A DNA stretch of 64,000 bases. It comes from Mobula hypostoma. Its lineage: Eukaryota. Shown one piece after another: positions 6,793 to 39,130 of the stretch (positions are counted from its first letter, which is position 1; each line of letters starts with the position of its first letter). The position numbers were made by a program, and so were the translations under genes. The stretch spans positions 26,846,001 to 26,910,000 of the forward strand of contig NC_086106.1 in the NCBI RefSeq assembly GCF_963921235.1, written 5' to 3'. Below the pieces are notes generated by a model, which worked only from the letters and a program-made list of their open reading frames with translations, was not told where the DNA came from and did not search any database.

Positions 6793-7050
6793 GGGCGGCA
6801 TAGTAGCGTCGCGGTGAATTCGACTCTACTACAATTCTGGTTCATCTGTAACTAGTTTGTGTGTCCTCACCATGGAATGCCAGGGTTTTCACCGACTGTT
6901 CTCGGATCCACCAACAGTTCAGAGACAAACTCCGTGGAATGATTAGTCATTGTAAGCTGTCCGATGATTAGGTTCCGGAAAAATCAGGGTTGCCAATGGT
7001 TTCAGGGGTTGTTTCTCAGGGCTGGAATGCCTTATTCTGCGCTGCATAAT
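6793..7050 (+). mobile_element. tRNA-derived SINE, paralog of 889-1180
   Basis: gggcggcatagtagcgtcgc... aligned by eye to the copy A SINE. Confidence 0.6.
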
Positions 7051-7518: not shown

Positions 7519-7652
7519 NNNNNNNNNNNNNNNNNNNNNNNNNNNNNNNNNNNNNNNNNNNNNNNNNNNNNNNNNNNNNNNNNNNNNNNNNNNNNNNNNN
7601 NNNNNNNNNNNNNNNNNNNNNNNNNNNNNNNNNNNNNNNNNNNNNNNNNNNN
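7519..7652. other. Assembly gap (134 N)
   Basis: Run of N at the position occupied by the TAC microsatellite in copies A and C. Confidence 1.
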
Positions 7653-7881
7653 GTCCCATTACTGCGATATTCAAAAGCAATAGAAAGCAGTGTCAGTCAA
7701 GATTTACATCAGCGATTAGTTTGCCTGGATTGTTGACTTCCGTCCACAAGTCAAACTCTTCTCAGAAAAGAACACCGTCCCGAAGTCCTGATCTGCTTGA
7801 AGTTCTCGCAATGAAGATGCATGTCCTGAATTCAGATGGTTGTTCTCAATATATCCGTTGTCATGCCGAATGCACTGCATC

Positions 7882-8300
7882 ATGTAAATAAGAATTGAGT
7901 CAGAGTTCGTAAAGTTTCAAAATGAACCAATGCGTGAGTGGTGGAAAATTTACCCGAAAAGGGAAAAGATATGTTTTCACGCAGAGAGTCTGACAACATC
8001 AAAGAATGGATAACGCTTGAAGTTAGGGATATAATCAAAGGGAAAGAAAGTTTTTGGAGGATTAATTGTGGTTATGTGATGGTTGGTACTCGGCTTATCA
8101 GTAATCTCCACCAAGTGCAGCAATGCCTCAGAGGCTGAGTGTCCTCATCCATTTCCGAGTATACCCAGTCCTGTATTCGCATGACGACTGCAGTCAAGCG
8201 ATTGACGCACATCGTCCCGTCATGATATGACCGATCAAAGTGTAACATTGCCGAACACTGCATAATACAGTTTATCCAGTTCCCAAATGGTAAAGATGCA
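7882..8300 (+). pseudogene. Candidate decayed leader + V relic (copy B)
   Basis: Paralog of 2000-2400; keeps gc|GTGAGT, ttttcacgcAG and IKGKESFWRINCGY. Confidence 0.3.
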
Positions 8301-8303
8301 TTT

Positions 8304-10837: not shown

Positions 10838-11208
10838 TGGCATAGTGGTAAAAATATTCCTGTACCATGTTTAGGTCATAGACAAAATGACCAAGTGGTT
10901 CGGTGACTCCAGTCGTGGATTTGGGACGTACGTTCACTTCTTTACTCCAGCCGTCTCCATGCCTAGAGATCGTCGTGGATTCTGTGGTTTTCCCACGGAA
11001 GTTTGTGCTTGATAATCAACATTTCAGTGATATGTTTTGTTACGCACCAGCAGCAATAGATATGAAATTAAGTCGGGGTTTCTATGAATAAACAACGAAG
11101 TTTGTTAACCTCTACTCAATAACATAGAAAAGTAAGCAACCTTTTACTTAATTTTTAAGTAACTGAAACGGAAGTTAACAGTGTTTCACGTCTATAATTA
11201 TCACACAG

Positions 11209-11475
11209 TCGAACCTAGTGACAACTCTTGACAAATCTTACTCAAACACAGTCTTAATGTGGTAGTTCAAAGAGTGCAAGTGATGAAATACGTGAGAGGA
11301 GAGACTCACTGAACCACCGATGAAGAGAAGACGAAACTGCTGACGCAAATCCAAGCCGAGAAATGCCTTGTCCAAAGAGATCACGAAGAATAAGATTTCT
11401 CACAATAACCCATCTAACCAATCTTTCGCCGGAGGTTGTCACCACACAGCAGCCGAGACTATGCAGGGGTTAACC
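11209..11475 (+). pseudogene. Decayed TCR V-delta-like pseudogene (copy B)
   Basis: Paralog of 2777-3038; SKEITKNKISH and cac aca gca gcc gag ac tat gca. Confidence 0.45.
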
Positions 11476-11479
11476 AGAA

Positions 11480-14400
11480 GTGTATGCCACAATACTCGTA
11501 TGGACCATACCAAATGTCAATCACAGAACGCCGCTGATTTCTACCCAACACTTTGGGTTCGTCCGAGGCTGGCAATTCTTCTATCTCTCTCTCTCTCTCA
11601 CCTTCGATTACGTTAGCACCGATTGTGACTCCCCCAACAAAACAACTGAGCAGCAAACTGCGGTCTCCCCTTTTACACCGGTTGGAACATGCCATCACGT
11701 GACATCACATCACCCACTCACACGACACTTACATCATGGAAATATCACGAGACAATAACATCATAATAATATCACGAGACAATACATCATGCTCACGAGA
11801 TACTAACGGAGCAGGTAAAACCTGCCCTCAAGAAAAGAAAAATTTTGATCTATCAAAAGCAAAATTTTAACTACAATTTGCAAAATATACAATGCATAAA
11901 GTTTGCAAAATGCACGATACACACACAGTTGTCATACAGTACTAATATAACCTGGCAGGAGTGTACACAAATATCAAAATTCCACTCCATAAAAAAATTA
12001 CATTGCAAGTTCAACATCTGGACAGATAGTCGACAATTACATTATCTTTGCCTTTCATGTGAGTTATTGAGTTATCATATTCCTTCAAAATAAACTACAA
12101 TTTAGCAACCTTCTATGTTCGTTTTTCAGTTTACTCAAAAATACCAATGGGTTGTGATCGGTGCAAACCCCGAGTGGTTTCTGAGTTGCGCCAACTTACA
12201 CATCAAAAATTTTCAGAGCTAAAAGAAGGGATAATAATTCATCTTCTAATGCTGAATAATTTCTTTGATGCCCATTAAATTTCTTGGAAAAGTAAGCCAC
12301 GGGATGGTCAACATCATCATAATTATCCCTTTGTAGTAACACTGCTCCTGCAGCCTCGTCTCTGGCATCCACAGCTAGTGAAAATGGTTTTTCAAAGTCA
12401 GGTGACCTGAGCATAGGGTGGTGACGTAGGATATCTTTCAACTTATCAAAGGCCTCCTGAGAAGGCTTTTTCCAAACACACTTCTCACCTTACTTCAGGA
12501 AGTTAGTTAACGGAAGGGCAATCTCGGAAAATTTCTTACAGAACTTACGGTAATATCCTACCATTCCCAAGAATCTTCTGACAGATTTTTTTAACAGTTG
12601 AGGTAAGAATCTTTAAAATTGTCTGAACTTTTGAACAGGAACCAACCTGCCTTGACCCACAACGTAACCAAGATAGGTCACAGTAACATGGCCAAATTCA
12701 CTTTTAGCTAAATTAATAGTTATGTTGGCTTGTGAAAGCCTTTCAAACAGCTTTCCCACTGCAGATATATGTGCTTCGCAAGTGTTATTCCCTGTGACTA
12801 AATCATCATTACAGACATCTGTATGTTTTAACCCTTCAATTACAGAATTAATCATTTTCTGGTATTTTTCGCGGAGCATTCTTCATTCCAAATGGCAGGA
12901 CATTGTATTCATATAACCCGTATGGCGTTACAAATGCTGAAATATCTGTCAAAGGAACACACCAATATCCTTTGAACAGGTGGATCTTTGTACGAAACTG
13001 AGCTCTTCCAACCTTATCCACAAAATAATCTATCCTTGGGATTGGATATGCATCGGTTTTTGTTACAGCTTTCACCTTTCTGTAATCAGTTCAAAACCGA
13101 ATACTACCTTCTGGTTTAGGTACCAAGACACAAGGTGAACTCCAATCCGAAGCAGAAGGCCGAAGAATAACATTTTCTAACAAATATTCCATTCCTTGTT
13201 CAGCGATTTTATATTTTTCCATGTCCATTCGAAATGGAAGTTGCTTTATTGGTTTGACGATCCCAACACCTACATCATGTCAGGCAACTGCGGTTTTTTT
13301 GGAAGGTCTGGAAATAAAAACCGAAATTTGACAATTAACTGCTTCATTTGCTGCCGCGGCTGTGGCTGTAGATGAGCCAATTTCTTATCAAAATTTTCCA
13401 AACTTCGAATTTGGTAGTCTGGCAGAAATAATGTTCGGTTTAAAATAAGCCTCAGATGGATCAATTACCAAGTTCGCAGGAAGATCAGGCTCATTGTCAT
13501 TGACGACAACTATCATAGCGGCGAACTGTATTTCATAATATGGTTTTATCATATTTAAATGACAAAGCTGCGTGGGCCTCCTCGATTTGGTGTTTGTACC
13601 GCACAGACAGCATTATTACCTTAACTTTTATGGGTTCGTTTGCACAGGGGGAAAAAAAAACACCGTATTTCCCAACTCAAATGACTTCGTTCTAGCTACC
13701 TTGTCATTCCAATTTTTCATTCTTTCTTGAGTAAATTTTAAATTTTCCCTTGCTAAGTTGCAATCTTTATGCCATCTTTCCTTAAATGTTAAGACATAAT
13801 CTGGCAAATTAGTTTGTAGTTCTTTGTTGACACACTGCTCTTTTAACAATGCTAAATGTCCTCGGACTCAATGCCCGAATACAAGTTCAAAAGGCCTAAA
13901 GCCTAGGGACTCCTGCACTGACTCCCTTACAGCAAATAAAAGCAAATGAACTACCGCATTCCAATCCTTCTCGTTTTCGACACAGAGCATCCTAATCATG
14001 GCTTTGAAGATAGAATGAAACCTTTCTAAGGCCCCCTGTGGTTCTAGATGGTACGCAGAAGATATAATGTGCTTGGCTCCTAGGTTATAAACTACCTGCT
14101 AGAATAATCCAGACATAGATTTACTTCCTTGATCAGACTGGATTTCTTTAGGCAACCCAAATAAAGTAAAGATCTTCATGAGAGGCTTCGTCACAGTTTT
14201 ATCTTTTATATTCCCGAGAGGTATTTCTTCGGCAAATCTAGATGATGTACAGATGATGGTCACCAAATCTTGATGTCCAGCTTTAGCTTTTGGCAATGGG
14301 CAAACACAATCTACAATAACTTTAGAAAACGGTTCACCAAATGCAGGATTATGTTGCATTTGTGCCATTGGGTTGTCTTGGTTAGGTTCACCCACAACCT

Positions 14401-15700
14401 GAGAAGTGTGAAAAGTTCGGCAAAATGTCGCCACATCTTTCCTCAAACCAGGCCAGAATAAATGTTTCATGACTGTGTTCACAGTTTTCTTCACATCTAG
14501 ATGGCCACCTAAGGGCATACTATGAGCCAAAGTGAAAATTTCATTCCTACAGACCTGAGGGTCGACGACCTGGTGACCAGCTGCCCAGTCTTCATTTGCA
14601 GGAATCTCAGGTGGTTTCCACTTCCTCATTAACACTCTACTCTTGGAATAAAACCCTATTGTCACCTTCTAAATCTCGCTATCTGGGAGAGCGTTGTCTC
14701 TCAAGGTGGCAATCTCAGGATCTCTGCTCTGCACCGTTATAATCTCTTTCCTGGACCGAGACAAGTTTTTATGGTCAGGCTCACTATGAGTATCCTGATC
14801 AAACAAGGAATGTAGGAAAGCTTCTGAGAAATCGTCAAAATCTGAATCCCGATTTGAGCTGTCATAGGTACTAGATCTAGGTTGCACAGACCATTGCCTT
14901 GGAAGAATATTTCGGCATAGCTCGGGTTACCACACAGGAGGGATACATGTCAGCATCCATCTTTGGATCATCAGTGATTGGCTTAATGTTGAACTGCACT
15001 GCAGGAACAACTTTTCCATCTGCTAGGTCATTCCCTCACAATAAAGAAACACCATCCACCGGTAAACTGTGTCGTAGTCCGATTTTAACAGGTCCTGAAA
15101 CTATCTCTGACGTTAAAACTACTTTGTGCAGAGGTGCTGGCGTAAGATTACCCTCAATATCTGGTATAAAATTTACTTCAGCTGTCTCGGTCTCATTCCG
15201 AAACCCTAGAACACTGTCTAACGTAAGTGACAGAGAAGCCCCAGTATCCAGAACAACTTTTATTGGTATTTGAGTGAATGCTTCATTCAGGGAAACAAAT
15301 CCCTCTGACATAAAATGATCGAATCCCTTCCTAACTTGGTGAGACCATGTCAGAGCTTCCTTTGAATGTCCCGAACCCTGCGGGATTATGGTATTTCAAA
15401 GTGTTGGATACAGGCATCTGGAGCTGATGCATTTGCCTTCTCACTACTGAATCAACCTGCAAGTGGACTTCACGGCACCGTGCGCGAAGACTCCCATGTC
15501 CAGTTCCATCTCCGAATTTTGAATTTTCTTCCCATTTAGAAAGTACATACCATACACTTCCTGACTCTATGTTCCATTTACCACCTCTATGCTCATTCTC
15601 CAAATCTGCCTCAGTCCTCCTGTAGTCTTCCTGCTTCCTCAATACTAGCTTCCCTCCAGCCTCCTTTGTGTCATCAGCAATAATGTCTTAGCGCTTTCCT
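11480..15700 (-). mobile_element. pol: Gmr1-like Gypsy element, copy B (gag remnant, protease, integrase, RT, RNase H, 3' LTR)
   Basis: Protease VVLDTGASLSL (ORF 15036-15311), integrase 14099-14665, RT 12613-13075, RNase H 12196-12441; domain order PR-IN-RT-RH. Confidence 0.88.
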
Positions 15701-23499: not shown

Positions 23500-25280
23500 A
23501 CACCAATCTGAACATAACACATCCAAATATTCAATTAATGATGGAGATGAAGAAGAATAGTTGACTCCCGATCGTGGGCATTCTAATACGACTGGCACCG
23601 GATGCTAGCATTGGGCATGGTGTCTGTTGGATGCCAAATAACACGGACTTATACATCAAAATTACAGTCGCCATCAGGCAACGCAACTTGGAGCAGTGTT
23701 TTCAATGTTGATTAACCATGGGAAAACTATATCGGAACAGGAGACAATTGAGCACGATTTTCCTGCAGAATGCTTATCGTGGGAATAAAATTACTCGGGG
23801 CCTTAACAGGGAAGACGGGAAAAAAAAAACAGGGCACATCAAATCGTGGAAGAATCTACCGCCTATCTTTCCTACTTCCCCGTTGGTTCTGAAAAGTCTC
23901 CAGGATCCAGTAAAGTCTCCAAGTAAGGGCATCCGGCGCATCATTCTCTAAATTTTGATTGCTAACATTGTCTGAAATGTTATCAACGTCTGTCTTTCTA
24001 CCATCTTTCGGAGTAGGATATTGCTCCCTTTCTAAATTAATTGCGGGTACTCGGGATGTGCGCGGCATAACTGGCGGATGTGTTTACAGACATTTTTAAT
24101 CTCTCCGTCTCCCAATGTAGACTGTCCTCCTGCTTCAAAACTTCGGTCATTGTTCCTGTACCTAAAAAGACCAAGGTAACATCTCCGAACGACTGGCGTA
24201 CTGTTGAACTCTCCTCAGTAACAAGCAAATGCTTTGAATGGTTGGTCAGGGACTACATCTGCGGCATGCTACAACCCACACTGGACCCCCTACAGGTCAC
24301 CTATCGACATAACGGTCCAATAGATGACGCAATAGCCACAGCTCCATACACTGTCCTTACACATCTAGAGAAGCGGGGTGCTTATGTATCAATGCTCTTT
24401 TTGGACTGCAATTCAGCATTCAAAACTGTATTTCTCTCCAGGCTCCACCAGAAGATCAGAGACCTTGCCCTTCACCCTGCCTTGTGTATCTGGATCCTGG
24501 ACTTTCTGTCAGATCGCCGCAGGTGGTAAGAAAGGGCTCTCTCACCATTGCTCCTCTGACCCTGAACACAGGTGCCTCAGGTCTGTATGCGAAGCCTCCT
24601 CCTTTACTCTTTGATTGCCAATTACTGTGTCCCTACCTAGATCTCCAATCCGCTAATTAATTTTGCTGAGGACACAACATGATGGATCTAATCTCATACA
24701 ATAATGAGGGACCCTAAGGAGAAGAATTCACCACACTTACTCGGTTGCATCAAGAAAACAACTTCTCTCCCAATGTCGCAGAACAAAAAAAAAACAACAA
24801 CAACAAAGGAGCTGGTTGTGGACTACAGGCAGAATGGACTCAGGCTAAACACTATTGACATCAATGGAACTTTAAACCTCAAGTTCTTCGGCATACACAT
24901 CACTGAGGATCTGACCTGTTCGGTAAATACCGGTTGTGTGGACTGGCTTCATCACTGCCTGGTGTTGGAACTGTACTTCCCTCAATCGCTGAACTCTGCA
25001 GAAAGTGGTGCGAACCACGCATCTGTAGATGCGACCTGCACAATATTCAGGACATATACAAAGAGAGGTGTGTAAAACGGGCCCGAAGGATCATTAAAGA
25101 CCCGAGACACCCCAAGCACACAATGGTCCAGCTGCTTCCATCCGGGATACCGGACTGCAGCATGATATCCTGGACCAATAGGCTCCGGAACAGCTTCCTC
25201 CACCAAGAGTTCAGACGGATTAAATCATACCGATACAATTGTATTTCTATGTTATTTTGACTGTCCTTCTGTAAATCGTA
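23500..25280 (+). mobile_element. Rex1/Babar-like LINE, decayed
   Basis: FTDIFNLSVSQ..CFKTSVIVPVPKK..NDWRTVELSS..KCFEWLV..LDPLQ..MLFLDCNSAFKT; 3' end RIIKDPRHP..LLPSG..RLRNSF. Confidence 0.8.
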
Positions 25281-25760: not shown

Positions 25761-27751
25761 AGTCTTCCAATATCTGGCAAGGAGTATATGCAAATATTAA
25801 GGTCCCGATAATGATTCCGGCCAGACACGCCGAATGCTTACTCATTCCCATACATGCCGCGTTGCCTGCTGAGTTAGTACTCCATTTTTTTGTGTGTATT
25901 GCGTTCAAGTATTCTGCCTGTCATACTTACAGTTCATGCTGAGAAAATGTAAAGAATGAAAAAAGTAACAATAACTAAACTATGGTAAAATAAATTTGCC
26001 TGCTACATTTCGCATTCTCTCACTCACACCTACTCTCGCTAAAACATCGAAGAAGCAATTCCTCAAGTTCACTTTGTAACACTGTCGACTCCACCGACGG
26101 CCCACCGCTTTCCCCTACCTTTTTTCCAATTTGTTCTTGTCTATCAATCCATATCACTTTTCAAAACACGAAAATGCGGCGAATTGGTGGATTATGCATT
26201 CCAATCGGCGAACGTGAGAGAGCTCCGTCTTATCATCTTTGCGATCTCAGATGGGCAGCAATTTTAAATACCAAACAGTCGCGAGTAGATGCCTTATTTT
26301 CTCAATCGGCGAACATTTCAGCGCTATGTCTTCTGCCGCTTTGTATCTCCGATAAGATCTGGTTGAAATCGGGGAGGAGAAAATGGCAGCGTGCCTGCGT
26401 GTGCGCCGCCCTCCCGTGAAAAATGATATCGTATCTTTTAAATAGGGGCCGTGGACAATTACGATTTGATGGAGAATGGAAGTGACAGCACAGAGGAACA
26501 TCTGGAGAAATTTCTGAAAAGCCCGTCTGCTGCTCTCGTTTCTGTGTGGTCGGGAATCTTTCGGAGGGTAGGCCTAAAAATTCCCAGCCTTGCCTGCTTT
26601 TGACGACCGAGAAGGAGGTCGAATCGTTTGGGCAGAGATTGCGCTCAGGCCCTGGTGTCGGAGAGCTGATCAGAGCTCGACGTTTTCGTTTTGCCTTGCC
26701 AGGTTGCTTCAGGTAGAACAGAGAAAATAGTACAGTACGGCATAACATTGAGACTTCGGAGTACGGTGCGGTGCAGACCGATGTAAATCACTTCATGATC
26801 CTTCTAACGTTTCGCCACACCCTGCACTTAACTTTGTTCTCCATTTATCCTATATCGATACGGCAGCAATTCTCTCTAATATCAGTTTATCAGTCTCTAC
26901 TCGCAGCAGTTGCTGCAGAGTCTAGAATTTTACAGGAGGTTGGCACTGGAATTCCCTAATAATAATAATAATAATAATAACAATAAAGTAATAATAATAC
27001 GATATAACTACTGACATCTCACTAAAACCGTCTTCCACTCAACTTACTGCAAAGCTGCTGTCTCTTGCTCTGTCTTTTGCGGCAGTGGATATGAACTTAA
27101 TTTTATCTAAAACAGTCTTCCAGATTTTCCAAACCCCTGGACACAAACGACAAGATTGACATCGAATGTGAATAGAAAGGACAGAAGGGTTGTTTGTTTT
27201 ACGCCGTTGGTCAAGCACACTCAGTTTGAAACTGCTTGGTGGCAGATTTCCTCTCATCTATACTTTATAAAAGTAGCCATCAAGGATTGGTGCGTCCAAA
27301 GTCTGAATGTGCCATCACACTCTTCCTAGGCTGAGGGAGAGTTTGTTAGCTCGTCCCGCGTACATGCCGTCAAGATCAGAGCACAGACTGATTTCTGTCA
27401 CAAAATATCAGAACTGAAGCATACTTGAAAACTCGGGGCGCACGTCACAACATCAATAAAGAACAAACAACCATATATTTTTGGGGGGAAAAAAAAGTGT
27501 CCTGTTCAAGACTAATGATTCAGACTCATCAATTTATAGGTCATCTCCGTCACACAGGTTGAAAGATAGGAAGTCATGGGTGGGGCTTCCTCACTCGGTT
27601 CAAAGACACGACATAGAATCAAAACTAACAACTGCCCCTCAGCAAACCTGTTGATAAAAGTTCACTGTCCAACTCTGAAGTACATTCTGCCATAACTTTG
27701 CAGAACGTGAGCTCCATCTCCTCGTCACTTCAGCAATATTCCTTGTTGACG

Positions 27752-27794
27752 ATGGGGGTCTTCTTTGTTTTCACACTCTGGCTCTGCTTACGGC
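27752..27794 (+). CDS. NAR-TCR V leader exon (MGVFFVFTLWLCLR)
   Basis: ATG 27752, 14 hydrophobic codons + 1 nt, GTGAGT donor at 27795; phase-1 intron of 139 bp to pyrimidine tract + tAG at 27933. Confidence 0.9.
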
Positions 27795-27933
27795 GTGAGT
27801 ACCTTTCACACATCCACATTATATTTACTTTAAATCTGTTTCAGCCCTCAGAGATGCAACCGGCGGAGATTATTCATGTGATTCGTCTATGACTACAACT
27901 CAATTTTCTCCGTGTTTTTTTTTTCAATCCTAG

Positions 27934-28227
27934 GTTCAATGAGTCAGTCGGTGACTCAGAGCCCGTCCATTGTAAACTTGAATGAGTGTCAGACTGCCAC
28001 TATCACCTGCAATTTCCAGCCTGGTTTTTCTGGTGAATATCGCTTTCACACTGGAAAATTCTTCAGGCAGACCAACTCAGCGGCCGAACGGAAAGAAGTC
28101 ACCCGCGGGGGGAGATTTGTTCCTTCGATTAAGAAAACTGATATGCAGTTTTCTTTGGCAATTCGGGACCTGCGAGTGGAAGACAGCGGCACCTATTACT
28201 GTCAAGCTGTGTACAAATGGCGTGCAA
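27934..28227 (+). CDS. NTCRV: NAR-TCR variable segment (IgNAR-like V)
   Basis: Open frame QSVTQSPSIVNLNECQTATITC..FFRQ..VTRGGRFVPSIKKTDMQFSLAIRDLRVEDSGTYYCQA; short HV2 and GGRF..S..K...FSL.I.DLRVEDSGTYYC match VNAR-type domains; followed by an RSS. Confidence 0.88.
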
Positions 28228-28265
28228 CACAATGATGGGCTTCGGCTTCGCGCTGTACAAAAACT
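28228..28265 (+). other. V recombination signal: CACAATG - 22 bp - ACAAAAACT
   Basis: Counted directly: heptamer 28228-34, spacer 28235-56, nonamer 28257-65. Confidence 0.92.
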
Positions 28266-28589
28266 TTCGCTGTAGCTTATTCCTGATTCAGACGGAGCAG
28301 AATGGATCTGCGGGTTTAGTTCATATTCTTGTCTCGCTGTGGATGCGTCCTGCAGTCCAGCTAACTGCCATTTTTTTTCTTATCATGTACAGTCTTTATG
28401 TTTCCGCCTCGCGTGTGCGCAGATGTTGTTCCCTACCCCGAGGTATGTGTCAATAAATGACGACAGAGAATTAAGAAATGCACATTCTTGTAGCCAAGTA
28501 CGGACGGAATTGTTCATGAACACTTGGAAACGGAAAATGCCAGCGCTGTGAATTTAATTCCTGCTCGACTCTTTCATGGATTCGCCAGC

Positions 28590-28617
28590 AGATTTGATAT
28601 TGATGTAAGGTACTGTG
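28590..28617 (-). other. 5' RSS of D (nonamer agatttgat - 12 bp - TACTGTG), degenerate
   Basis: Heptamer 6/7; nonamer 5/9 vs GGTTTTTGT at 12-bp spacing. Confidence 0.65.
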
Positions 28618-28633
28618 TACAGTTTGGGACAAA
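28618..28633 (+). CDS. NTCRD: NAR-TCR D segment TACAGTTTGGGACAAA
   Basis: 16 bp between opposing heptamers; open in all three frames (YSLGQ / TVWDK / QFGT). Confidence 0.88.
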
Positions 28634-28661
28634 CACAGTGGAAGAGATCTGAACAAAAACA
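28634..28661 (+). other. 3' RSS of D: CACAGTG - 12 bp - ACAAAAACA
   Basis: Consensus heptamer, 12-bp spacer gaagagatctga, 8/9 nonamer. Confidence 0.93.
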
Positions 28662-28997
28662 GAATATAATAAATATATAAATAAATCATATTTAAACGAT
28701 ATATTCTCCATATCCCATGGAAAAAAATACAAACCTGGCGATGTTCACCGTCTAATCTGTTTAATTTCCATATTGCATATGCATTTTTGATTGACAGGTA
28801 TGCTATGTTTTTTTTTCTTCTCGGAATTGATCTGCGGTGCGTGTTCCTGTTTTATTTTACTTTGGTCTTGCTTTCCTACAACGAACATATCGGCTTGCCA
28901 CCAAATGGGGAATATTGCATGCTATGTGTTGCATTAACAACCCTGGAAACATTGGGAAGCCTATCGTAGCGTTTCCTAACCAGATTCACGTGAGTGT

Positions 28998-29036
28998 AGT
29001 TGTTGTATGGTGGAAACTGAGAACAGGATCATTGTG
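28998..29036 (-). other. J RSS: AGTTGTTGT - 23 bp - CATTGTG
   Basis: Nonamer 28998-29006 (7/9), spacer 29007-29029, heptamer 29030-36 (6/7). Confidence 0.88.
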
Positions 29037-29094
29037 TATGAATGGACGACTCATACTCTAGATGGAACAGGGACAAAGGTCACCGTCAGGTCCG
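29037..29094 (+). CDS. NTCRJ: NAR-TCR J segment (YEWTTHTLDGTGTKVTVRS)
   Basis: GxGTKVTV motif; phase-1 GTAAGT donor at 29095; splices in frame to 30468. Confidence 0.9.
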
Positions 29095-30467
29095 GTAAGT
29101 ATCCACAAACATCGACGATTCGTCAAGTATCTCAGCCATATAAGTATCACTTGATAGATGATCGATTGATTTAAAATCATTAAAATTTAAATGGGTCTGC
29201 TGTCAAACCTAATTTCTACAAAGTGTGCCAGAGAGGACGTAAGTGCAGGGTGCCTTTTCAGGATGAGCCGTTCTTGTAAAAATATTCAACACATCAGAAC
29301 GTCTCGCATTCGTGCTGCTGGTGAACAATACATGTTGATAGTGCCAATAACGCCCCAACAGCAAAACTGAGGAAATAAAGAATGGAAAATCAGGTGCACC
29401 GGCCCGAAAGGAAGTAGACTGAGAGGAGGCAGGTTCATTCGCAGAATGTGAGGGATGCATTTATTTTCCACTGCAGTAGGTTTTAGAGAGCTGTATCGAT
29501 GCACAGCTCTTCACTGTTGAAAGAGAGTGACTGGAATTTTATAGTTTGTCTTTTGTGGTGTGAATCTGTAGACTGAATCTACACTCACTGTATAGAAAGG
29601 CAAGGTGGTAAACTGAATTAACAGAGTCAGATAGAGAGGGAAATTTCTGCTATGGGCAAGGAATAAATGCTGGTGTAATCTTCGCAGAATGAATCCATCA
29701 GACTGCTGTCAGACTGTGGGAAATATTGTTAGAACTTAAGGCATTAACCGCCGGCAGAATATATATATATATGAATGAGTCACAGAGATGCAAGAAATAA
29801 TCAAACTTGTTTTCTACAAATTATTCTCAAATAGTACCGCGAATTGCACACCCCATTGATGAAAAAAATAAAAAAAAGGGAAGGGTATAAAACATCTATA
29901 TCGGCTGCTAAAATCCAGTCGAAAATAAACCTTCGCCGTCAGCAGCTTTGAAAATTATCTGACCAGTCTGTACCGTTCAATCTCATTACTGTGATGAGCA
30001 TGTTATAATGCAAATGTGTAACTTATGGGGGGAAATTTATATTAAAAAAACATCTGGATGGAGCATCTATCAATTCGGGACAAAAAAAAACTCTCACCCA
30101 TTATTTTTCGGAATTAAACTGACGTTTAAATTAAACACCACAAAACTGAGAAAAAGGAATTCGGCCCATTATATGCTTGTAGGCTCTCTGCAATTGTTCC
30201 ATGAAATTAGTTCTGCTTTCCACAAAGCTGTCCAAAATATGAAAGATGTTTTAAAAATCGCAAGTTATCCGCAATTTACCATTGAGTCCCTGATTTTATT
30301 TCACTGCAGCAATTCCTTATAATAATTGTCAACGACAATAAATATTGTTTACTCAGATTTGAAATGAAACAAGTTTGTGTGCAACAAAAATCTCCTTATC
30401 ATATTCGGGATGTTTTTTCTGACAGTTATCGGTAAATCAGCAGTAATATTCCTCTACATTCATACAG

Positions 30468-30761
30468 AATCCATTTCTCAGAGTCCTGAACTACAAACTA
30501 CACTTGCCGACACCGTAATTTTAAACTGTGGATATGACGCGTATTGTCGCAACACAATACACTGGTATCGCCAGCTTCCAGGGCAGGCACCCATATTCCT
30601 GCTCCAGGGACAAACATTTGGAGCAGAAGATAAGAAAAAAAATGCCGGAGAACGAATTACTGGTTTTGTCGATCCTGGTAAGAAAATCAGCCAGCTGACG
30701 ATCTCCAAAGTGCAACTGGGTGACGCTGCTGTGTATTACTGTGCAATGAGTCGGTATACAG
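30468..30761 (+). CDS. STCRDV: Supporting TCR-delta V segment of NAR-TCR
   Basis: Acceptor catacAG at 30467; ESISQSPELQTTLADTVILNCGYDAYCRNTIHWYRQLPGQAPIFLLQ..KKISQLTISKVQLGDAAVYYCAM; canonical C/W/C plus a CDR1 Cys. Confidence 0.9.
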
Positions 30762-30800
30762 CACTGTGATGCCGCGCATGGACAGCGCTGTTCAAGAACT
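30762..30800 (+). other. Proximal 23-RSS of supporting V: CACTGTG - 23 bp - TCAAGAACT
   Basis: Directly abuts the V coding end; heptamer 6/7, nonamer 6/9. Confidence 0.8.
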
Positions 30801-30822
30801 AGAGTGATTCTCGTTACAAGCA

Positions 30823-30861
30823 CACAGTGCTAGGAAGCAGCGAGGGAACAATACAAAAACT
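30823..30861 (+). other. Second, near-consensus 23-RSS: CACAGTG - 23 bp - ACAAAAACT
   Basis: Heptamer 30823-29, spacer 30830-52, nonamer 30853-61; not adjacent to any coding segment. Confidence 0.85.
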
Positions 30862-31459
30862 CATTTGGTTTTATCATATAAATACACCACTGCCGAGAAC
30901 GGAGACAAACGGCAAGAAACCGCAGTGTGGTGGGATTTTTAGTAGAATGATGATAGAGAAAATAAAAGCACCTCAATCAACACCCAAAATACGCTGGGCG
31001 AAATCATTATGTCATAACGGAAGTTCTTCGGTTCGAAACATCATTTCCTTGAAAGCTGCCGGATCTACCGATTCCTCTCATTTCTACTGATAGAAGACAC
31101 ACAACTCTCAAGAATATATTCCCGGAGTGAAAAGGCATCATTGCCTTCAGGGAATTCGCATTTTAGATCAGAAGTGCCTCAGACATAGCAACAGAATTGG
31201 GCCAATCAGCCTATCGAGGGTGCCCCGCCATTCCATCATTATTATTTCCGGATCCCAATACATTCACCAGTATATCCGTGTGGTACAGGCAATCTACCAG
31301 ACATTTTAAATGAAGGATCGTCGCAAATCCGTTTGCGCCGTGTAAACAGCGCAGAAAAGTAACGGACATTGAAATGTTACAAATTCCAAACAATAAATGC
31401 ATAATCTATTGTTTTGGAAATGTACGGCATCACGAACTACAGATCTCATTACGATTTTA

Positions 31460-31880
31460 GAAACATAGGAACATAGAAAACCTACAGCACAATACAGGCC
31501 CTTAGGCCCACAAAGTTGTGCCGAACATGTCACTACCTTAGAAATTACGAGGGTTACCCATAGCCTCTATTATTCTAAGCTCCATGTACCTATCCAAAAG
31601 TCTCTTAAAAATCCTGTCGTGTCCGCCTCCACCAGCGTTGCCGGCAGCCCATTCCACGCACTCACCACTCTCTGTGTAAAAAAAACTTACCCCTGATATC
31701 TCCTATACACCTATTTCCAAGCACCTTAAACCTGTGCCCTCTTGCGGCAGCCATTTCACCCCTGGGAAAAAGCCTCTGACTATCCACACGATCAATGCCT
31801 CTCATCATCTTACACTCCTCTATCAGGTCACCTCTCATCCTCCGTCGCTCCAAGGAGAAAACGTTGAGTTCGGTTAACCT
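31460..31880 (-). mobile_element. CR1 LINE 3' end with (catagaaa)n-type tail
   Basis: Tail gaaacataggaacatagaaaa at ~31460; ORF 31662-32003 nearly identical to 73-414. Confidence 0.85.
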
Positions 31881-32477
31881 GTTTTCATGAGCCACATCCA
31901 CACCCGTGCCTTTATCACAAAGCAACTTTAGGGAGCCTGGATGTGAATTTATAGCATGTAAAATGCTTTCACCTGAGAGTATTAACGTGCAGGCGATGCT
32001 CACTGAGGTGTCTTCTGTTGCGTTCAGTTTCTTCCGATAGCATGAATCTCATTAAAATGAAACTGCACTCTTTTGGCAATTACATGCTAATCCAATTGAA
32101 ATGATTGCTATGATTGGAGGTAATCGAGAGAACTGGGAGAGGAGCTGCAAAAGAAACATTCGATCGTTAGTTACTACAAGGCAACGTCGTATTTCCTCCC
32201 ACTCCTTAGAGATAACCTACGTTTTGCCATTCCTGAACTTTCCTTTAGTTTAGTCTGAACAGAAACTTGTTCGTACTGGAATCCCCTAGCAGTGCACTAA
32301 AAATGCATTCACTTGAACTGGAATTCCTGGCTCTGTACATTAGAAAACAAAATAAATCATTTACCTCTATTATTTATATGTTTTACTTCATTGCTGCTGC
32401 CATGCCTTTCAAAATAACTACAATTATATTAACTATTTATATTAATATAAAGATATAATACTGTTTGTTTAAATTTT

Positions 32478-32765
32478 GGGCGGCATAGTAGCGTCGCGAT
32501 TACTTCGACTATATTACAGTTCTGGGAGTAATAGTTCGGAATTCAATCCTGGTTCATCTGTAACTAGTTTGTGTGTCCTCACCATGGAATGCTAGGGTTT
32601 TCACCGACTGTTCTCGGATCCACCAACAGTTCAGAGAAGAATTCCGTGGAATGATTAGTCATTGTAAGCTGTCCGATGATTAGGTTCCAGAAAAATCAGG
32701 GTTGCCAATGGTTTCTGGGGCGGTGCATTTCTCAAGGCTGGAATGCCTTATTCTGCGCTGCATCA
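32478..32765 (+). mobile_element. tRNA-derived SINE, paralog of 889-1180
   Basis: Near-identical to the copy A SINE. Confidence 0.6.
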
Positions 32766-33251
32766 TGAAATTAACAACTAAGTACATCTTGCAAGGAATT
32801 TAAACAACATTTACTGATGAAGCCATACGGTACATAAACAAGTGCATAATCGATCGCCAACCAGACAGCAATGCTTAATATTATTTATTTTCTCTAGAAA
32901 CACTGAAAGCCCATTTTGATTCTATCGCTTCTATACTGGGAATTTTATTTTACACTCATGGACAATTAGATCTGTCACAAGTATCGTTGCATGAAAATCT
33001 TCCCTACCAAATGCAATAAATATATACAACATTTGATCTCTCTGCGCCAGAAGAACACATTCTATAACACAACAGTCCATGTTTTATTATTTCGTAAATT
33101 ATTGTTGCACATTGGTAATTTATTATTGTGTATATTATTATTCTCTACTGTATTCTTAGCTAGTTCTGAATACTGCTAAGTGTATTTTAAGCGTTGCTGC
33201 TGTAACGAAAGAAACTCCCACTCAGGAACAAGTTCTTCTTTTTCTTCTAAA

Positions 33252-33353
33252 TATTATTATTACTATTACTACTATTACTACTACTACTACTACTGCTGCT
33301 GCTGCCACTGCTACTATTACTACTGCTACTACTACGACTATTACTACTACTAC
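33252..33353. repeat. (TAC/TAT/TGC)n microsatellite
   Basis: Direct inspection. Confidence 0.95.
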
Positions 33354-34370
33354 ACTTGCTATATCGGTTCCGTTACGGCGATATTCAAAAGCAACAGAAA
33401 GCAGTGTCAGTCATGATTTACATCAGCGATTAGTTTGCTTGGATTGTTGACATCCGTCCACAAGTCAAACTCTTCTCACAAAAGGACACATCCCGAAGTC
33501 CTGATCTGCTTGAAGTTCTCGCAATGAAGATGCATGTTATGAATTCAAATGGTTGTTCTGAATATATCCGTTGTCATGCCGAATGCACTGCATCATGTAT
33601 ATAAGAACTGAGTCGGAGATCGTAAACTTTCCAAATGAACCGATGAGTGAATGGCGGAACACTCACCCGAAAATGGAAAACATATGTTTTCACGCAGAGA
33701 GTCTGACAACATCACAGAATGGATAACGCTTGAAGTTAGGGATATAATCAAAGAAAAAGAAAGTTTATCCAGGATTAATTGTGGTTATATGATGTTTGGT
33801 ACTCGGCTTATCAGTAATTTCCACCAAGTGTAGCAGTGCCTAAGTGGCCGAGTGTCTTCATCCATTTCCGAGTATACCCAGTCCTGTATTCGCATGTCGA
33901 CTGCAGTCAAGCGATTGAAGCACATTATCCCGTCACGATATGACTGATGGAGGTGTAACATTGCCTAACATTATATACTATAGTTTATCGAATTCCCAAA
34001 TGATAAAGATGCTTTTGGTAGAGTGGTGAACAATATGCCTGTAACACGTTTAGGTCAGAGACTAAATGACCAAGGGGTTCGGTGACCCCAGTCTTGGATT
34101 GGGGACGTACGTTCACTTCTTTGCTCCAGCCGCCTCCATGCCTAGAGATCGTTGTGAATTCTCTGGTTTTCCCACTGAAGTTTGTGCTTGATATTCAACA
34201 TTTCAGTGATATGTTTTGTTACGCACCAGCAGCAATAAATATGAAATTGAGTCGGGTTTTTATGAATAAACAACGAAATTTATTAACCTCTACTCAAAAA
34301 CATAGAAAGTAAACAAACTACTAACTGAAACGGAAGTTAACACTGTTATGCATCTATAATTATCAAACAG

Positions 34371-34632
34371 TCGAACCTAGTGACAATTGTTAACAAATCT
34401 TACTCAAACACGGTCTTAAGGTTGTAATTCAAAGAGTCCAAGTGATTTATGAAATACGTGAGAGGAGAGACTTCTTGAACCACCGATGAAGAGAAGACGA
34501 ATCTGCTGAGGCAAATCCCAGCCGAGTAATGCCTTGTCAAAAGAGATCACGAAGAATCAGATTTCTCACAGTAACTGACCTTTCGCCGGAGCTGGTCACC
34601 ACACAACAGCCGAGACTATTCAGGGGTTAACC
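34371..34632 (+). pseudogene. Decayed TCR V-delta-like pseudogene (copy C)
   Basis: Paralog of 2777-3038 and 11209-11475. Confidence 0.45.
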
Positions 34633-34639
34633 TAAAGTG

Positions 34640-37600
34640 TATGCCACAATACACGTATGTACCATACCGAATCTCAATTACAGAACGCCGCTGATTTCTA
34701 CCCAACACTTTGGTTCGTCCCAGGCTGGTAAATCTTCTCTCTCTCTCTCTCTCTCTCAGACACACACACACTCTCTCTCTCTCTCGCTCTCCCGCTCTCT
34801 CTTTCTCCTTCGAATGCGTAAACACCCGCTGTGAACGTGACTCCCCCAACAAAACAACTAATCAAGAAACTGTGTCCTCATCCTTTATACCGGTTGGAAC
34901 ATGCCATCGCGTGACATCACATCACCCACTATCACGACACTTATATCATGGAAATATCACGAGACAATTACATCATACCGATATCACGAGACAATTATAT
35001 CATGCTCACGAGATACTCACGGGACAAGTAACACCTGCCCTCAAGAAAAGAAAATATTGATCTGTCAAAAGCAAAATTTAAACTACAATTTACAAAATAT
35101 ACAGATGCATAAAGTTTACAAAATGCACGATGCACACACAGTTATCATACAGTACCAATATAACATGGCAGGAGTGTACACAAATATCAAAATTCCACTC
35201 CATTTAAAAATTACATTGCAAGTTCCACATCTGGACAGATAGTCGGCAATTACATTATATTTGCCTTTAATGTGAGTTATTCAGAGATCATATTCTTCTG
35301 AAAATTAACTACAATTTAGTAACCTTCTATTTTGGTTTTTCAGTTTACTCAAAAATACCAATGGATTATGATCGGTGTAAACCCCTAGTGGTTTCTAAGT
35401 TGCGCCAACTTACACATCAAAAATTTTCAGAGCTAAAATAAGGGATAATAATTCCTCTTCTATCGCTGAATAATTTCTTTGATGCCCATTAAATTTCTCG
35501 GAAAAGTAAGCCACGGGATGATCAACATCATCATAATTATCCCGTTATAGTAATACTCCTCTTGCAGCCTCGTCTCTGGCATCCACAGCTAGGGAAAATG
35601 GCTTTTCAAAGTCAGGTGACCTGAGCACAGGGTGGCGACATAGGATAGCTTTCAACTTATCAAAGGCCTCCTGAGAAGGCTTTTTCCAAACACACTTCTC
35701 AACTTTCTTCAGGAGGTTAGTTAATGGAAGGGCAATCTCGGCAAATTTCTTACAGAACTTACCGTAATATCCTACCATTCCCAGGAATCTTCTGAGAGTT
35801 TTCTACTAGCTGAAGTTTGAACCTTCAAAATTGTCTGAACTTTTGAACAGGAGTGAACCTGCGTTGACCCACCACGTAACCAAGGTCGGTCACAGTCGCA
35901 TGGCCAAATTCACTTTTAGCTAAATTAATAGTTAGGTTGGCTTGTGAAAGCCTTTCAAACAGCTTTCCCACTGCAGTTGTGTGTGCTTTCCAAATGTTAT
36001 TACCTGTGATTAATCATCAATACAGGCATCTGTATGTTTTAACCCTTGAATTACAGAATTAATCATTCTCTGTAAGGTTCCAGGAGAATTCTTCATTCCA
36101 AATAGCAGGACGTTGTATTCATTTAACCCAGCATGCATTACAAATGCAGAAATATCTCTACATTTATCTGTCCAGGGAACACACCAATATCCTTTTAACT
36201 GGTCGATCTTTGTACGAAACTTAGCTTTTCCAGCTCTATCCACAAAGTAATCTACCCTTGGGATTGGATACATATCGGTTTATGTTACAGCATTTACCTT
36301 TGTATAATCTGTACAAAACGAATACTACTTTCTGGCGTCATCGGAAGTCATTCCTGCCTATGGCCATCAAACTTTACAGCTCCTCCCTTGGAGGGTCAGA
36401 CACCCTGAGCCAATAGGCTCATCCTGGGCTTATTTCCTGGCATAATTTACATTTTACTATTTAATTATTTATGGTTGTATTACTATTTAATTATTTATGG
36501 ATCAACTATAACGAAAACCAATTTCCCCTGGGATCAATAAAGTATGACCATGACTATGACTATGACTATGACTATGGTTTGGTCACCAAGACTCAAGGTG
36601 TACTCCAATCCGAAGCAGAAGGTCGAATAATAATATTTTCTAACATATATTCCATTTCTTGTTCAGTGCTTTTACATTTTTCCATGTCCATTCGAATGGA
36701 AGTTGCTTTATGGGTTTGACGTTCCCAACATCTACATCATGTGAGGCGACTGTGGTTCCTTTTGGAACGTCTGGAAGTAAATCCAAAACTTTGATAATTA
36801 ACTGCTTTATTTGCTGCCGCTGCTGTGGCTGTATATGAGCCAATTTCTTATCAATAGTTTCCAAAATTGTCGAATTTGGAAGTCTGGTGGAAATAATGTT
36901 CGGTTTAAAATTAGCCTCAGATGGATCAGGTACCAAGTTCCCAGGCAGCTCAGACTCAGTGTCATTGACAACAACAGTCATAGCGGCGATCTGGTTTTCA
37001 TAATATGTTTTTCTCATATTTACATGACAAAGCAGCGTAGGCCTCCTCGATTTGGAGTTTGTACCGCATAGACCGCATTATTACCTTAAGATATAATTTC
37101 GTAAGGGCCGTGAAATTTAGCTTTTATTGGTTCGTTTGCACAGTGGAAAAAACAGCACCTTATTTCCCGACTTAAATGACCTCGTTCTAGCTTCCTTGTC
37201 ATACCATGTTTCCATTCTTTCCTGAGTAGATTTTAAAATTTCCCAACTTAACTGCAAGCTTTTTGCAATACTTCCGTAAATTTCAAGACATAATCCCGCA
37301 AATTAGTCTGTAGTTCTTTGTTAACACACTGTTGTTTTAACAATGCCAAAGGTCCTCGGACTGAATTACCAAACACAAGTTCAAAGGGGCTAAAGCCTAG
37401 GGACTCCTGCACTGACTCCCTTACTGCAAATAAAAGCAAATGAACTACCGCATCCCAATCATTCTCCATTTCGACGCAGAATATCCTAAACATGGGTTTG
37501 AGGATAGAATGGAACCTTTCTAAGGCTCCCTCTGATTCTGAATGGTACGCAGACGATATAATCTGCTTGGCTCCCAGGTTATAAACTACTTGCTGGAATA

Positions 37601-39130
37601 AACCAGGCATAAAATTACTTCTTTGAAGACTGCATTTTTTAGGCAACCCAAATACAATAAAGATCTTCATAAGAGCCTTCGTCACAGTTTTAGCTCTTAT
37701 TTTCCTGTGAGGTATTGCTGCTGCAAACTCAGAATCTGTACACATGATGGTCAGCAAATCTTGATGTCCTGCTTTAGCTTTTGGCAATGGGCAAACACAA
37801 TCTACAATAACTTTAGAAAACGGTTCACCAAATGCAGGAATATTTTGCATTTGTGCCATTGGGTTGTCTTGGTTAGGTTCACCCACAACCTGACAGTGTG
37901 ACAAGTTCGAAAAAATGTCGCCACATCTTTCCTCAAACCAGGCCAGAAGAAGTGTTGCATAACTTTGTTCACAGTTTTACTCACACCTACATGGCCACCT
38001 AAGGGGCATACTATGAGCCAAAGGTAAAATTACATTTCTACAGACCTTGGAAACGACTAATTGGTGAACAGCTGCCCAATCCTCATTTGCAAGAATCTCA
38101 GGTGGTCTCCACTTTCTCGTTAACACTCCACTCTGGAAATCAAACCCTACTGGCACATTCTCAATCTCGCTATCTGGGAAAGCGTTCTCTCTGAACGTGG
38201 CAACCTCAAGATCTCTGCTCTGCTCTGCTCTGCTATAATCTCTTTCCTGGCATAGACAAGTTTTTATAGTCAGACTCACTACAAGTATCCTGATCGAACA
38301 AGGATGATAGGAAAGCTCCTGGCAAATCATCAAAAGCTGAATCTCGATTTGAGCTGTCATGGGTAGTAGACCAATGCTGCACAGAACCATCTGCCTTGGC
38401 AGAATATTTCGGCATAGCTCCGGTTACTACACAGGAGGGATACATGTCAACATCCATCTTTGGATCATCAGTGATTGGCTTATTTGTCAGCTGCACTGCA
38501 GGAACAACCTTTCCATCTGCTCGGTCATTCCCTAATATAAAGAAAGACCATCCACCGGTAGACTGTGTTGTAGTCCGATATTAACAGGTCCTGAATCTGT
38601 CCCTGACATTAAAACTGCTTTGTGCAGAGGTGCAGGCGTAAAGTTACCCTCAATACCTCGTATAAAATTTACTGCACCGTGTCAGTCTCATCGCTAAACC
38701 CTAGAACACTGTCGAACATAAGTGACAGAGAAGCCCCTGTATCCCTAAGAAATTTTATTGGTACTGGAGAGGACCCTTTATTCAGGGCATAAATCCCTCT
38801 GACGTAAAATGATCGAATCCCTTCCTAACTCGGTCAGACTGTGTCAGACCTTCCTTTGAATGTCGCAAACCTGCGGGTTTATGGGTATTTCAAAGTGTTG
38901 TACACAGCCATCTGGAACTGATGCATTTGCCTTCTCACCACTGAATCAACCTGCTAGTTGAGGTTTACGGCACCGTGCGCGAAGACTCCCATGTCCATTT
39001 CCATCTCCGATTTTTCAATTTTCTTCCCATTTTGAAAGTGCATACCATACACTGCCTCTTTCCTGCCTCTTTCAGTGACTTGCTTCCTCGAACTGGACCG
39101 CCCGGTTGTAACAATATTCAAACTATAATT
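34640..39130 (-). mobile_element. pol: Gmr1-like Gypsy element, copy C
   Basis: Integrase ORFs 37248-38390, RT 36010-36273, RNase H 35545-35778; same PR-IN-RT-RH order. Confidence 0.88.

What the first reader, a model, noticed from the sequence alone, without database searches (positions are those of the whole stretch)
30762..30861. Two tandem same-orientation 23-RSS behind the supporting V: possible built-in second chance or decoy
The V abuts a suboptimal RSS (CACTGTG/TCAAGAACT). A near-consensus RSS (CACAGTG-23-ACAAAAACT) with an unrelated spacer begins 22 bp after the first ends. Joining at the stronger distal RSS would keep an in-frame TGA (30767-69), so it would be non-productive, but it would leave the proximal RSS intact for a second rearrangement. 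Inference: a two-step or editing mechanism, a way to tune NAR-TCR frequency, or the leftover RSS of a deleted V. I know of no description of this arrangement in NAR-TCR, but could not search.
Basis: partly seen in the sequence, partly recalled or inferred. Interest (0 to 1): 0.75.

Follow-up and report, generated by a model that had tools for sequence, protein, structure and literature searches.

The report
Tandem recombination signals behind NAR-TCR V
Behind the second variable-gene segment of a ray's two-headed T-cell receptor lie three head-to-tail copies of one 61-base unit, each derived from a whole RAG cutting signal; sharks and other rays have the same repeat, so it is old and not chance, but whether the extra signal is ever cut is not known.

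Summary
The supporting V ends at 30761. A 23-RSS starts at 30762 (CACTGTG/TCAAGAACT) and a near-consensus one at 30823 (CACAGTG/ACAAAAACT), 61 bp apart, and TGA 30767-69 is in frame.

The two signals are units 1 and 2 of a 61-bp head-to-tail repeat (39-bp RSS plus 22-bp flank). A decayed unit 3 lies at 30885-30945.

A second RSS-like unit sits at exactly +61 behind seven supporting V genes (this ray, sawfish, thorny skate), and two shark loci carry five-unit arrays. Five conventional V genes and one Heptranchias cassette have none.

The distal signal aligns with sawfish unit 2. Its heptamer and nonamer are better kept than the rest of the unit (15/16 against 19-31 of 45-46; p from below 0.001 to 0.06). 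In skates and other sawfish cassettes unit 2 has decayed.

The "leftover of a deleted V" reading is refuted.

By published assays the proximal heptamer is not weak; only its nonamer is (G at position 5).

The scan found this feature before on other DNA of this genome: the sister cassette and one 1.76 Mb away. I found no published description, but the main NAR-TCR papers were not held.

The parts
27752..27794 (+). Leader exon of the NAR-TCR cassette (context)
   Evidence: ATG at 27752 and GT donor at 27795, read.
27934..28227 (+). NAR-TCR V exon (context). Its own RSS is 28228-28265, CACAATG, 22-bp spacer, ACAAAAACT.
   Evidence: tblastn matches to the NAR V of sawfish, Hemiscyllium and Heptranchias.
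28618..28633 (+). NAR-TCR D, flanked by 12-RSSs (3' RSS at 28634-28661)
29037..29094 (+). NAR-TCR J. Its 23-RSS lies at 28998-29036 on the minus strand, and a GT donor follows at 29095.
30468..30761 (+). Leaderless supporting TCR-delta V exon. AG acceptor at 30466-67, Cys in CDR1, YYC at 30734-30742.
   Evidence: 55-60% protein identity to sawfish and skate supporting V.
30762..30822 (+). Repeat unit 1: proximal 23-RSS (heptamer 30762-68, nonamer 30792-800) plus 22-bp flank. It abuts the V.
   Evidence: Hit by a unit HMM built without window sequence, E 1.6e-5.
30767..30769 (+). In-frame TGA formed by heptamer positions 6-7 and the first spacer base
   Evidence: The same codon position carries TGA in four sawfish cassettes, Amblyraja and the shark contig L007.
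30823..30884 (+). Repeat unit 2: distal near-consensus 23-RSS (heptamer 30823-29, nonamer 30853-61) plus flank
   Evidence: Aligns column for column with sawfish unit 2, 69-74% identity, 15/16 in heptamer plus nonamer. HMM hit alone is weak, E 0.1.
30885..30945 (+). Repeat unit 3, decayed: heptamer lost (CACCACT), spacer about 21 bp, A-rich nonamer remnant CAAGAAACC, flank kept
   Evidence: HMM hit E 0.0018. Aligned with sawfish unit 3.

Best explanation
The two signals are the first two units of an old 61-bp head-to-tail repeat. Each unit is a complete V-type 23-RSS (7+23+9) plus a 22-bp flank, and a third, decayed unit follows. The repeat is a trait of the NAR-TCR supporting V-delta family in sharks and batoids.

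Unit 1 abuts the V and is the signal that can make productive joints. Unit 2 in this ray still looks like a fully competent RAG target, and its heptamer and nonamer seem to be kept by selection.

Inferred steps, none shown: RAG sometimes cuts at 30823. The coding end then carries 61 extra bases with an in-frame TGA, so the joint is sterile. Unit 1 stays intact inside that joint and can later recombine with a 12-RSS further downstream (another D or a J), which deletes the sterile joint. The net effect is competition for RAG plus a possible second try. The structural part is shown (I hold it at about 0.95). Cutting at unit 2 and any benefit from it are inferred, and the confidence given is for the whole statement.
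For: Structure: the coordinates and the 61-bp period. A unit HMM built from 25 units of other species hits the window head to tail at 30762, 30823 and 30885, with nothing comparable elsewhere except the NAR V RSS.

Family-wide: a second RSS-like unit lies at exactly +61 behind seven supporting V genes. It is intact in this ray and four sawfish cassettes (L001 at 4180 and 15982, L009 at 13125 and 1245) and decayed in Amblyraja L002 and sawfish L008. Five-unit arrays follow the V in Hemiscyllium L004 and in shark contig L007, where four units carry CACAGTG and near-consensus nonamers. Five conventional V genes in the same loci have none.

Orthology: window unit 2 is closest to sawfish unit 2 (74%, 69%) and at background identity to window unit 1 (52%).

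Constraint: heptamer plus nonamer of unit 2 are 15/16 identical between the ray and three of the four sawfish cassettes (12-14/16 in the fourth, L009 at 1245). The rest of the unit is 19-22/45 without gaps (Fisher p at or below 0.001 for the three, 0.047 for L009 at 1245), or 28-31/46 with gaps (p 0.01-0.06).

Competence: CACAGTG+CT is a top-class heptamer context, scoring 1.150 (PMC9723617). ACAAAAACT keeps purine-A/T-purine at nonamer positions 4-6 (PMC12711392).

Sterile outcome: TGA at 30767-69.
Against: Unit 2 has decayed in three skates, in two other sawfish cassettes and in Hemiscyllium. It is therefore dispensable for a working cassette.

The selection test rests on a single ray-sawfish contrast, and with gaps allowed it weakens to p 0.01-0.06.

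In L007 the intact distal units show no contrast between signal and non-signal positions (p 0.24). Their intactness may only reflect recent expansion.
Confidence: 0.5

Rival explanations
1. Neutral relic. An old slippage or unequal-crossover duplication of the RSS region simply persists in slowly evolving elasmobranch DNA. Unit 2 is near consensus in this ray by retention and has no role. If RAG cuts it at all, the result is only wasted joints.
For: Unit 2 decays freely in skates, in sawfish L008-type cassettes and in Hemiscyllium, and unit 3 has decayed everywhere in batoids. Shark arrays differ in copy number and look recently homogenised (units 79-90% alike, no signal-specific conservation). 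Alignable non-coding stretches further downstream keep roughly 45-50% identity between ray and sawfish, so 57-69% in the units is not a large excess. The Heptranchias cassette has a single RSS.
Against: 15/16 signal positions of unit 2 are shared between the ray and three of four sawfish cassettes, while the spacer and flank diverged. The 61-bp register has stayed free of indels in units 1 and 2 of five cassettes. Cassettes with a weakened unit 1 nonamer are the ones that keep a good unit 2.
Confidence: 0.3
2. Accessibility or docking element. The array works without being cut at the distal units. Repeated A-rich nonamers at 61-bp intervals keep nucleosomes off, or hold the RAG1 nonamer-binding domain near the V. 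This raises use of unit 1 by a V that must compete with many conventional V genes.
For: Unit 3 has lost its heptamer in all batoid cassettes but keeps the A-tract followed by CC. Functional nonamers are reported to act partly through nucleosome repulsion (PMC12711392 abstract). The whole unit, including the 22-bp flank, is conserved from sharks to batoids.
Against: There are no chromatin or binding data. A-tracts may persist for mutational reasons. This reading does not explain why the unit 2 heptamer is also kept in the ray and sawfish. Skates manage with a decayed array.
Confidence: 0.12
3. The distal RSS is the orphaned signal of a V (or D) segment that was deleted, or a footprint of germline RAG activity.
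For: A lone good RSS preceded by 22 bp of non-coding sequence could look like this in a single genome.
Against: The same 61-bp period recurs as 2-5 head-to-tail units in several species. The 22 bp before the heptamer is the repeat's own flank, not a V end. No oppositely oriented partner signal and no target-site duplication are present. No 12-RSS lies on its 5' side, so it is not a D.
Confidence: 0.02
4. Chance match or assembly artefact.
For: None beyond the fact that RSS-like strings occur at random. One three-mismatch hit at 19567 is of that kind.
Against: 0.0017 sites of this quality are expected per window. The units are too diverged (52%) to be a collapsed or duplicated assembly read. 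The same layout is found in four independent assemblies and one metagenome contig.
Confidence: 0.01

Closest known systems
Canonical V-type 23-RSS of TCR alpha/delta V segments
   Same: Each of units 1 and 2 has a CAC-led heptamer, a 23-bp spacer and an A-rich nonamer, oriented with the heptamer towards the V. The spacer resembles that of conventional V genes in the same loci.
   Different: Normal V segments carry one RSS. Here the whole RSS plus 22 bp is repeated head to tail 2-5 times, and only the first copy abuts coding sequence.
NAR-TCR doubly rearranging cassette (Criscitiello et al. 2006; features as summarised in PMC1845163 and PMC12227049)
   Same: Leader, NAR V, D and J, spliced onto a leaderless supporting V-delta with a Cys in CDR1.
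   Different: The accounts I could read do not mention more than one RSS behind the supporting V. The primary papers were not held, so I cannot say that it was never shown.
Cryptic RSS used in receptor editing or VH replacement (from general knowledge)
   Same: A second RAG target on the same V allows a further rearrangement after a first joint.
   Different: The VH-replacement signal is a heptamer embedded in the V coding end, with no proper nonamer, and lies upstream of the joint. Here the extra signal is a complete consensus RSS downstream, and the one kept for the second try is the regular V RSS.
Isolated deleting elements such as delta-Rec or the kappa-deleting element (from general knowledge)
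   Same: A good RSS not attached to a usable coding segment, whose use gives a non-productive product.
   Different: Those are single-copy elements that delete a constant region. This one sits 61 bp behind each supporting V, is part of a repeat, and no deleting role is evident.
Minisatellite or tandem repeat
   Same: Constant 61-bp period, head-to-tail copies, copy number varying among taxa (1 to 5), and within-array similarity in a shark (79-90%).
   Different: The repeated unit is a functional recombination signal. In batoids the copies are old and positionally orthologous rather than homogenised.

Membership tests
V-type 23-RSS (unit 1, 30762-30800) | Heptamer starts with CAC and abuts the coding end | tested here: met
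   CACTGTG at 30762, directly after the V end at 30761.
V-type 23-RSS (unit 1, 30762-30800) | Spacer of 23 +/- 1 bp and a nonamer with purine-A/T-purine at positions 4-6 | tested here: inconclusive
   The spacer is 23 bp. The nonamer TCAAGAACT has G at position 5, and C or G there is predicted to lose RAG1 R391 contacts (PMC12711392).
V-type 23-RSS (unit 1, 30762-30800) | Used by RAG in vivo | not testable with these tools
V-type 23-RSS (unit 2, 30823-30861) | CAC-led heptamer, 23-bp spacer, consensus-like nonamer, same orientation as the V RSS | tested here: met
   CACAGTG, 23 bp, ACAAAAACT, 15/16 to consensus.
V-type 23-RSS (unit 2, 30823-30861) | Abuts a usable coding segment | tested here: not met
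   It is preceded by unit 1 (61 bp), which holds an in-frame TGA.
V-type 23-RSS (unit 2, 30823-30861) | Used by RAG in vivo | not testable with these tools
Tandem repeat of the RSS unit | Head-to-tail copies with a constant period | tested here: met
   Starts at 30762, 30823 and 30885. Period 61 in sawfish (4119/4180, 15921/15982, 13064/13125, 1184/1245), Amblyraja (15303/15364), L004 and L007.
Tandem repeat of the RSS unit | Copies homologous beyond the heptamer and nonamer | tested here: met
   Not visible inside the window (28/61; TRF finds nothing). Shown through other species: sawfish unit 2 hits the shark-unit HMM at E 2e-5, window unit 2 is 74% identical to sawfish unit 2, and the window hits.
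NAR-TCR supporting V-delta | No leader exon, splice acceptor at the V start, preceded by NAR V-D-J in the same cassette, Cys in CDR1 | tested here: met
   Features as listed in PMC1845163.
RAG transposition footprint | Pair of oppositely oriented 12- and 23-RSS-like ends with a short target-site duplication | tested here: not met
   Both signals have the same orientation and the same spacer class, and there is no partner signal.
D segment | Short coding stretch flanked by a 5' 12-RSS and a 3' 23-RSS | tested here: not met
   No 12-RSS lies upstream of 30801-30822. The upstream element is a 23-RSS in the same orientation.

The most novel reading that the evidence does not exclude
The 61-bp array is a selected cis-element peculiar to the NAR-TCR supporting V. 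It would be a natural queue of complete RSSs that sets how often, and in how many tries, this V rearranges. Two mechanisms are possible: sterile distal joints followed by rescue from the proximal signal, or a nucleosome-free RAG docking pad. Lineages would keep a strong distal unit when the proximal nonamer weakens.
Probability: 0.25. Interest if true: 0.8.

Novelty: new variant of a known kind. Interest (0 to 1): 0.55.

Why it matters
V(D)J recombination is described as one signal per gene-segment side. Here a whole V family carries 2-5 complete signals in tandem across sharks, sawfish, skates and a ray. That is a natural competition substrate for RAG.

It bears on several questions: how RSS strength and position decide usage in chromatin, whether sterile joints followed by rescue occur outside artificial constructs, and how the frequency of the two-V-domain NAR-TCR chain is set.

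It also affects annotation. Gene predictors read through these arrays and report false C-terminal tails on supporting V genes.

Tried and rejected
- Tandem Repeats Finder on 30600-31200 found nothing, and in-register identity inside the window is at background. The repeat cannot be proved from this genome alone and needed other species.
No RNA or DNA reads could be laid on the site, so use of 30823 against 30762 was not tested.
- Rfam scan of 27000-32000: no family.
- The look-up of encoding contigs returned no DNA for Hemiscyllium P0009, Heterodontus P0012 and Carcharodon P0013. For those species, and for Rhincodon, Stegostoma, Chiloscyllium and Pristiophorus, only protein tails that read through the RSS were available.
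- Literature: searches for NAR-TCR with RSS terms and for 'tandem/duplicated/double RSS' found no description. The key papers PMC1458790, PMC7039070, PMC7909615 and PMC3222143 are not held.
- Readings rejected: a minus-strand RSS at the proximal heptamer (no nonamer at 12 or 23 bp); a D-like element between the signals (no 5' 12-RSS); a deleted-V relic; a RAG transposition footprint; chance; assembly artefact.
- The hit at 19567 is a chance match in non-V sequence.
- The supporting-V tree did not resolve whether cassettes with intact unit 2 form one lineage. The window V sits on a long branch.

Full report
**What is in the window.** The window holds one NAR-TCR cassette:
- leader exon 27752-27794
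- NAR V exon 27934-28227, with its RSS at 28228-28265
- D 28618-28633, between 12-RSSs
- J 29037-29094, with its 23-RSS on the minus strand at 28998-29036
- after an intron, a leaderless supporting V-delta exon 30468-30761

No other V is present. Positions 1-6260 repeat 31590-38225, so a sister cassette must lie just left of the window.

**The observation.** It is exact. CACTGTG (30762-68), 23 bp and TCAAGAACT (30792-800) are followed by 22 bp, and then by CACAGTG (30823-29), 23 bp and ACAAAAACT (30853-61). TGA 30767-69 is in the V frame. A 23-RSS with at most one mismatch is expected 0.0017 times per window and 1.3e-6 times within 100 nt, and it is the only one present. The proximal signal is ordinary in quality, but its place at the V end is not chance (about 1.7e-4).

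**What it is.** The start-to-start distance is 61 bp. Inside the window the two 61-mers share 28 positions, nearly all in the heptamer and nonamer, and Tandem Repeats Finder sees nothing. A note from an earlier follow-up on the sister cassette (s1-142028) suggested a 61-bp repeat, and I tested that independently.

Protein searches with the supporting V found two-V gene models in many elasmobranchs, and I fetched the DNA of nine loci. The results by species:
- **Sawfish (Pristis pectinata).** Four related cassettes have a second 23-RSS exactly 61 bp after the first: 4119/4180 and 15921/15982 in L001, and 13064/13125 and 1184/1245 in L009.
- **Thorny skate (Amblyraja).** The proximal RSS is near consensus. 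At +61 lies a decayed copy, CACAGCA/CCGAGAACC. Leucoraja and Rhinoraja are similar but further damaged.
- **A divergent sawfish cassette (L008).** It has a good unit 1 and decayed units 2 and 3.
- **Epaulette shark (L004).** Five units follow the V, and the first is a perfect consensus RSS.
- **Shark contig L007.** This 1007-nt contig from a metagenome assembly is nearest Mustelus by V tree. It has five units of exactly 61 bp, four of them with CACAGTG and near-consensus nonamers.
- **Protein tails only.** Gene models that read through the RSS show the same periodic pattern in Rhincodon, Stegostoma, Chiloscyllium and Pristiophorus.
- **Without the repeat.** Five conventional V genes in the same loci have a single RSS and no repeat. 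The Heptranchias cassette (L005) also has only one.

A profile built from 25 units of the other species, with no window sequence, hits the window at 30762 (E 1.6e-5), 30885 (E 0.0018) and 30823 (E 0.1). The only other hit of similar strength is the NAR V RSS. The window therefore holds three head-to-tail units, the third decayed: heptamer lost, A-rich nonamer remnant and flank kept.

**Orthology and constraint.** A batoid alignment places units 1, 2 and 3 in the same columns, without indels in units 1 and 2 of the ray, four sawfish cassettes and Amblyraja. Window unit 2 is most like sawfish unit 2 (74% and 69%) and at background identity to window unit 1 (52%). The duplication therefore predates the split of these batoids, and the copies have not been homogenised since. 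In the shark contig the units are 79-90% alike, which points to recent expansion or homogenisation.

Between the ray and three of the four sawfish cassettes, the unit 2 heptamer and nonamer are 15/16 identical (12-14/16 in the fourth, L009 at 1245). The other positions are 19-22/45 identical without gaps (Fisher p at or below 0.001 for the three, 0.047 for the fourth) or 28-31/46 with gaps (p 0.01-0.06). Unit 1 shows no such contrast. This is suggestive of purifying selection on the distal signal in this lineage. It is one phylogenetic contrast only, and unit 2 has clearly decayed in skates, in L008-type sawfish cassettes and in Hemiscyllium.

Cassettes with a weakened unit 1 nonamer (T or G at position 5) are the ones that keep a good unit 2. 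That pattern is not phylogenetically independent.

**Predicted competence.** In a high-throughput plasmid assay, heptamer position 4 is the least discriminating. CACTGTG+AT (unit 1 here) scores 1.093 against 1.144 for CACAGTG+AT, and CACAGTG+CT (unit 2 here) scores 1.150 (PMC9723617, Table 1; 12-RSS context, mouse RAG). The proximal heptamer is therefore not weak.

Functional nonamers share purine-A/T-purine at positions 4-6, and C or G at position 5 is predicted to lose the RAG1 R391 contacts (PMC12711392). Unit 1 has G there, and unit 2 is consensus. Unit 2 should bind RAG better, and both should be cleavable.

**Consequence of using each.** A joint at 30762 gives a normal V end. A joint at 30823 adds 61 bases with TGA at codon 10 after the Cys, so it is sterile. 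The same TGA position is found in the sawfish L001 and L009 cassettes, Amblyraja and L007, while L008 and L004 have open frames there. After such a joint unit 1 remains intact with its heptamer against the V. By the 12/23 rule it could pair with any 12-RSS left downstream (a further D or a J), which would delete the sterile joint. This is inference.

I could not check it, and RNA would in any case under-report stop-containing joints. Two cDNA-like shark proteins (P0041, P0062) continue from the V end straight into J and C, which is consistent with unit 1 use in sharks.

**Rivals.**
- A neutral relic remains well possible, given the free decay of unit 2 in several lineages.
- A role without cutting is hinted at by unit 3, which keeps its A-tract after losing the heptamer. 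The A-rich nonamers could exclude nucleosomes or dock the RAG1 nonamer-binding domain (PMC12711392).
- A deleted-V relic, a transposition footprint, a D element, chance and assembly error are all contradicted.

**Novelty.** RSSs and NAR-TCR are known. A conserved tandem array of complete RSSs behind one V family is not described in any paper I could search. The primary NAR-TCR papers were not held, so prior description cannot be excluded. The scan itself had already noted the feature on the sister cassette and on a cassette 1.76 Mb away. I rate it a new variant of a known kind and moderately interesting, with the function open.

Noticed in passing
window 1-6260, 6347-14734, 31590-38225: The stretch downstream of the cassette is present three times: 1-6260 and 31590-38225 (99% identical at the start, about 90% further on), plus a partial third copy at 6347-14734 that contains the N gap 7519-7652. 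This implies a 31.6-kb tandem duplication carrying a sister cassette left of the window.
   Followed up: partly
window 28228-28265; L001 1545, 13339, 25179: The NAR V RSS has a 22-bp rather than 23-bp spacer in the ray and in three sawfish cassettes, so the short spacer is conserved.
   Followed up: no
window 30377-30469: An open frame runs from a leader-like hydrophobic stretch (MFFLTVIGKSAVIFLYIHT) straight into the supposedly leaderless supporting V. This is the subject of another first-stage note.
   Followed up: no
window 30885-30945 and sawfish unit 3 (L001 4241, 16043; L009 13186, 1306): Unit 3 has lost its heptamer in every batoid cassette but keeps an A-tract followed by CC and the 22-bp flank. 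The flank (with GGATTA in sharks) is conserved from sharks to batoids.
   Followed up: partly
L002 about 15480-15550, L003 about 17370 onward, L006 about 13100 onward: In the three skates GT or GA microsatellites begin where unit 3 would be.
   Followed up: no
L007 (ENA ERZ27276711 k141_5642): A contig in a metagenome assembly is shark genomic DNA. It is a supporting V nearest Mustelus, followed by five 61-bp units, four of them with CACAGTG heptamers and near-consensus nonamers.
   Followed up: partly
proteins P0009-P0011, P0044, P0059, P0072, P0078 and others: Automatic gene models of supporting V genes read through the RSS array and carry false C-terminal tails of 20-60 residues. Others splice the V directly to the TCR constant region.
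   Followed up: no
window 24131-24409 (+), 57620-57832 (-), 9939-10157 (+): Reverse-transcriptase-like open frames show that the cassette is embedded in retroelement-rich DNA.
   Followed up: no
L006 12860-12910; L003 17150-17200: The Leucoraja supporting V has lost the Cys frame (frameshift) and has an extra base in the heptamer. The Rhinoraja copy has YHC and a shortened spacer. Both are likely pseudogenes.
   Followed up: no
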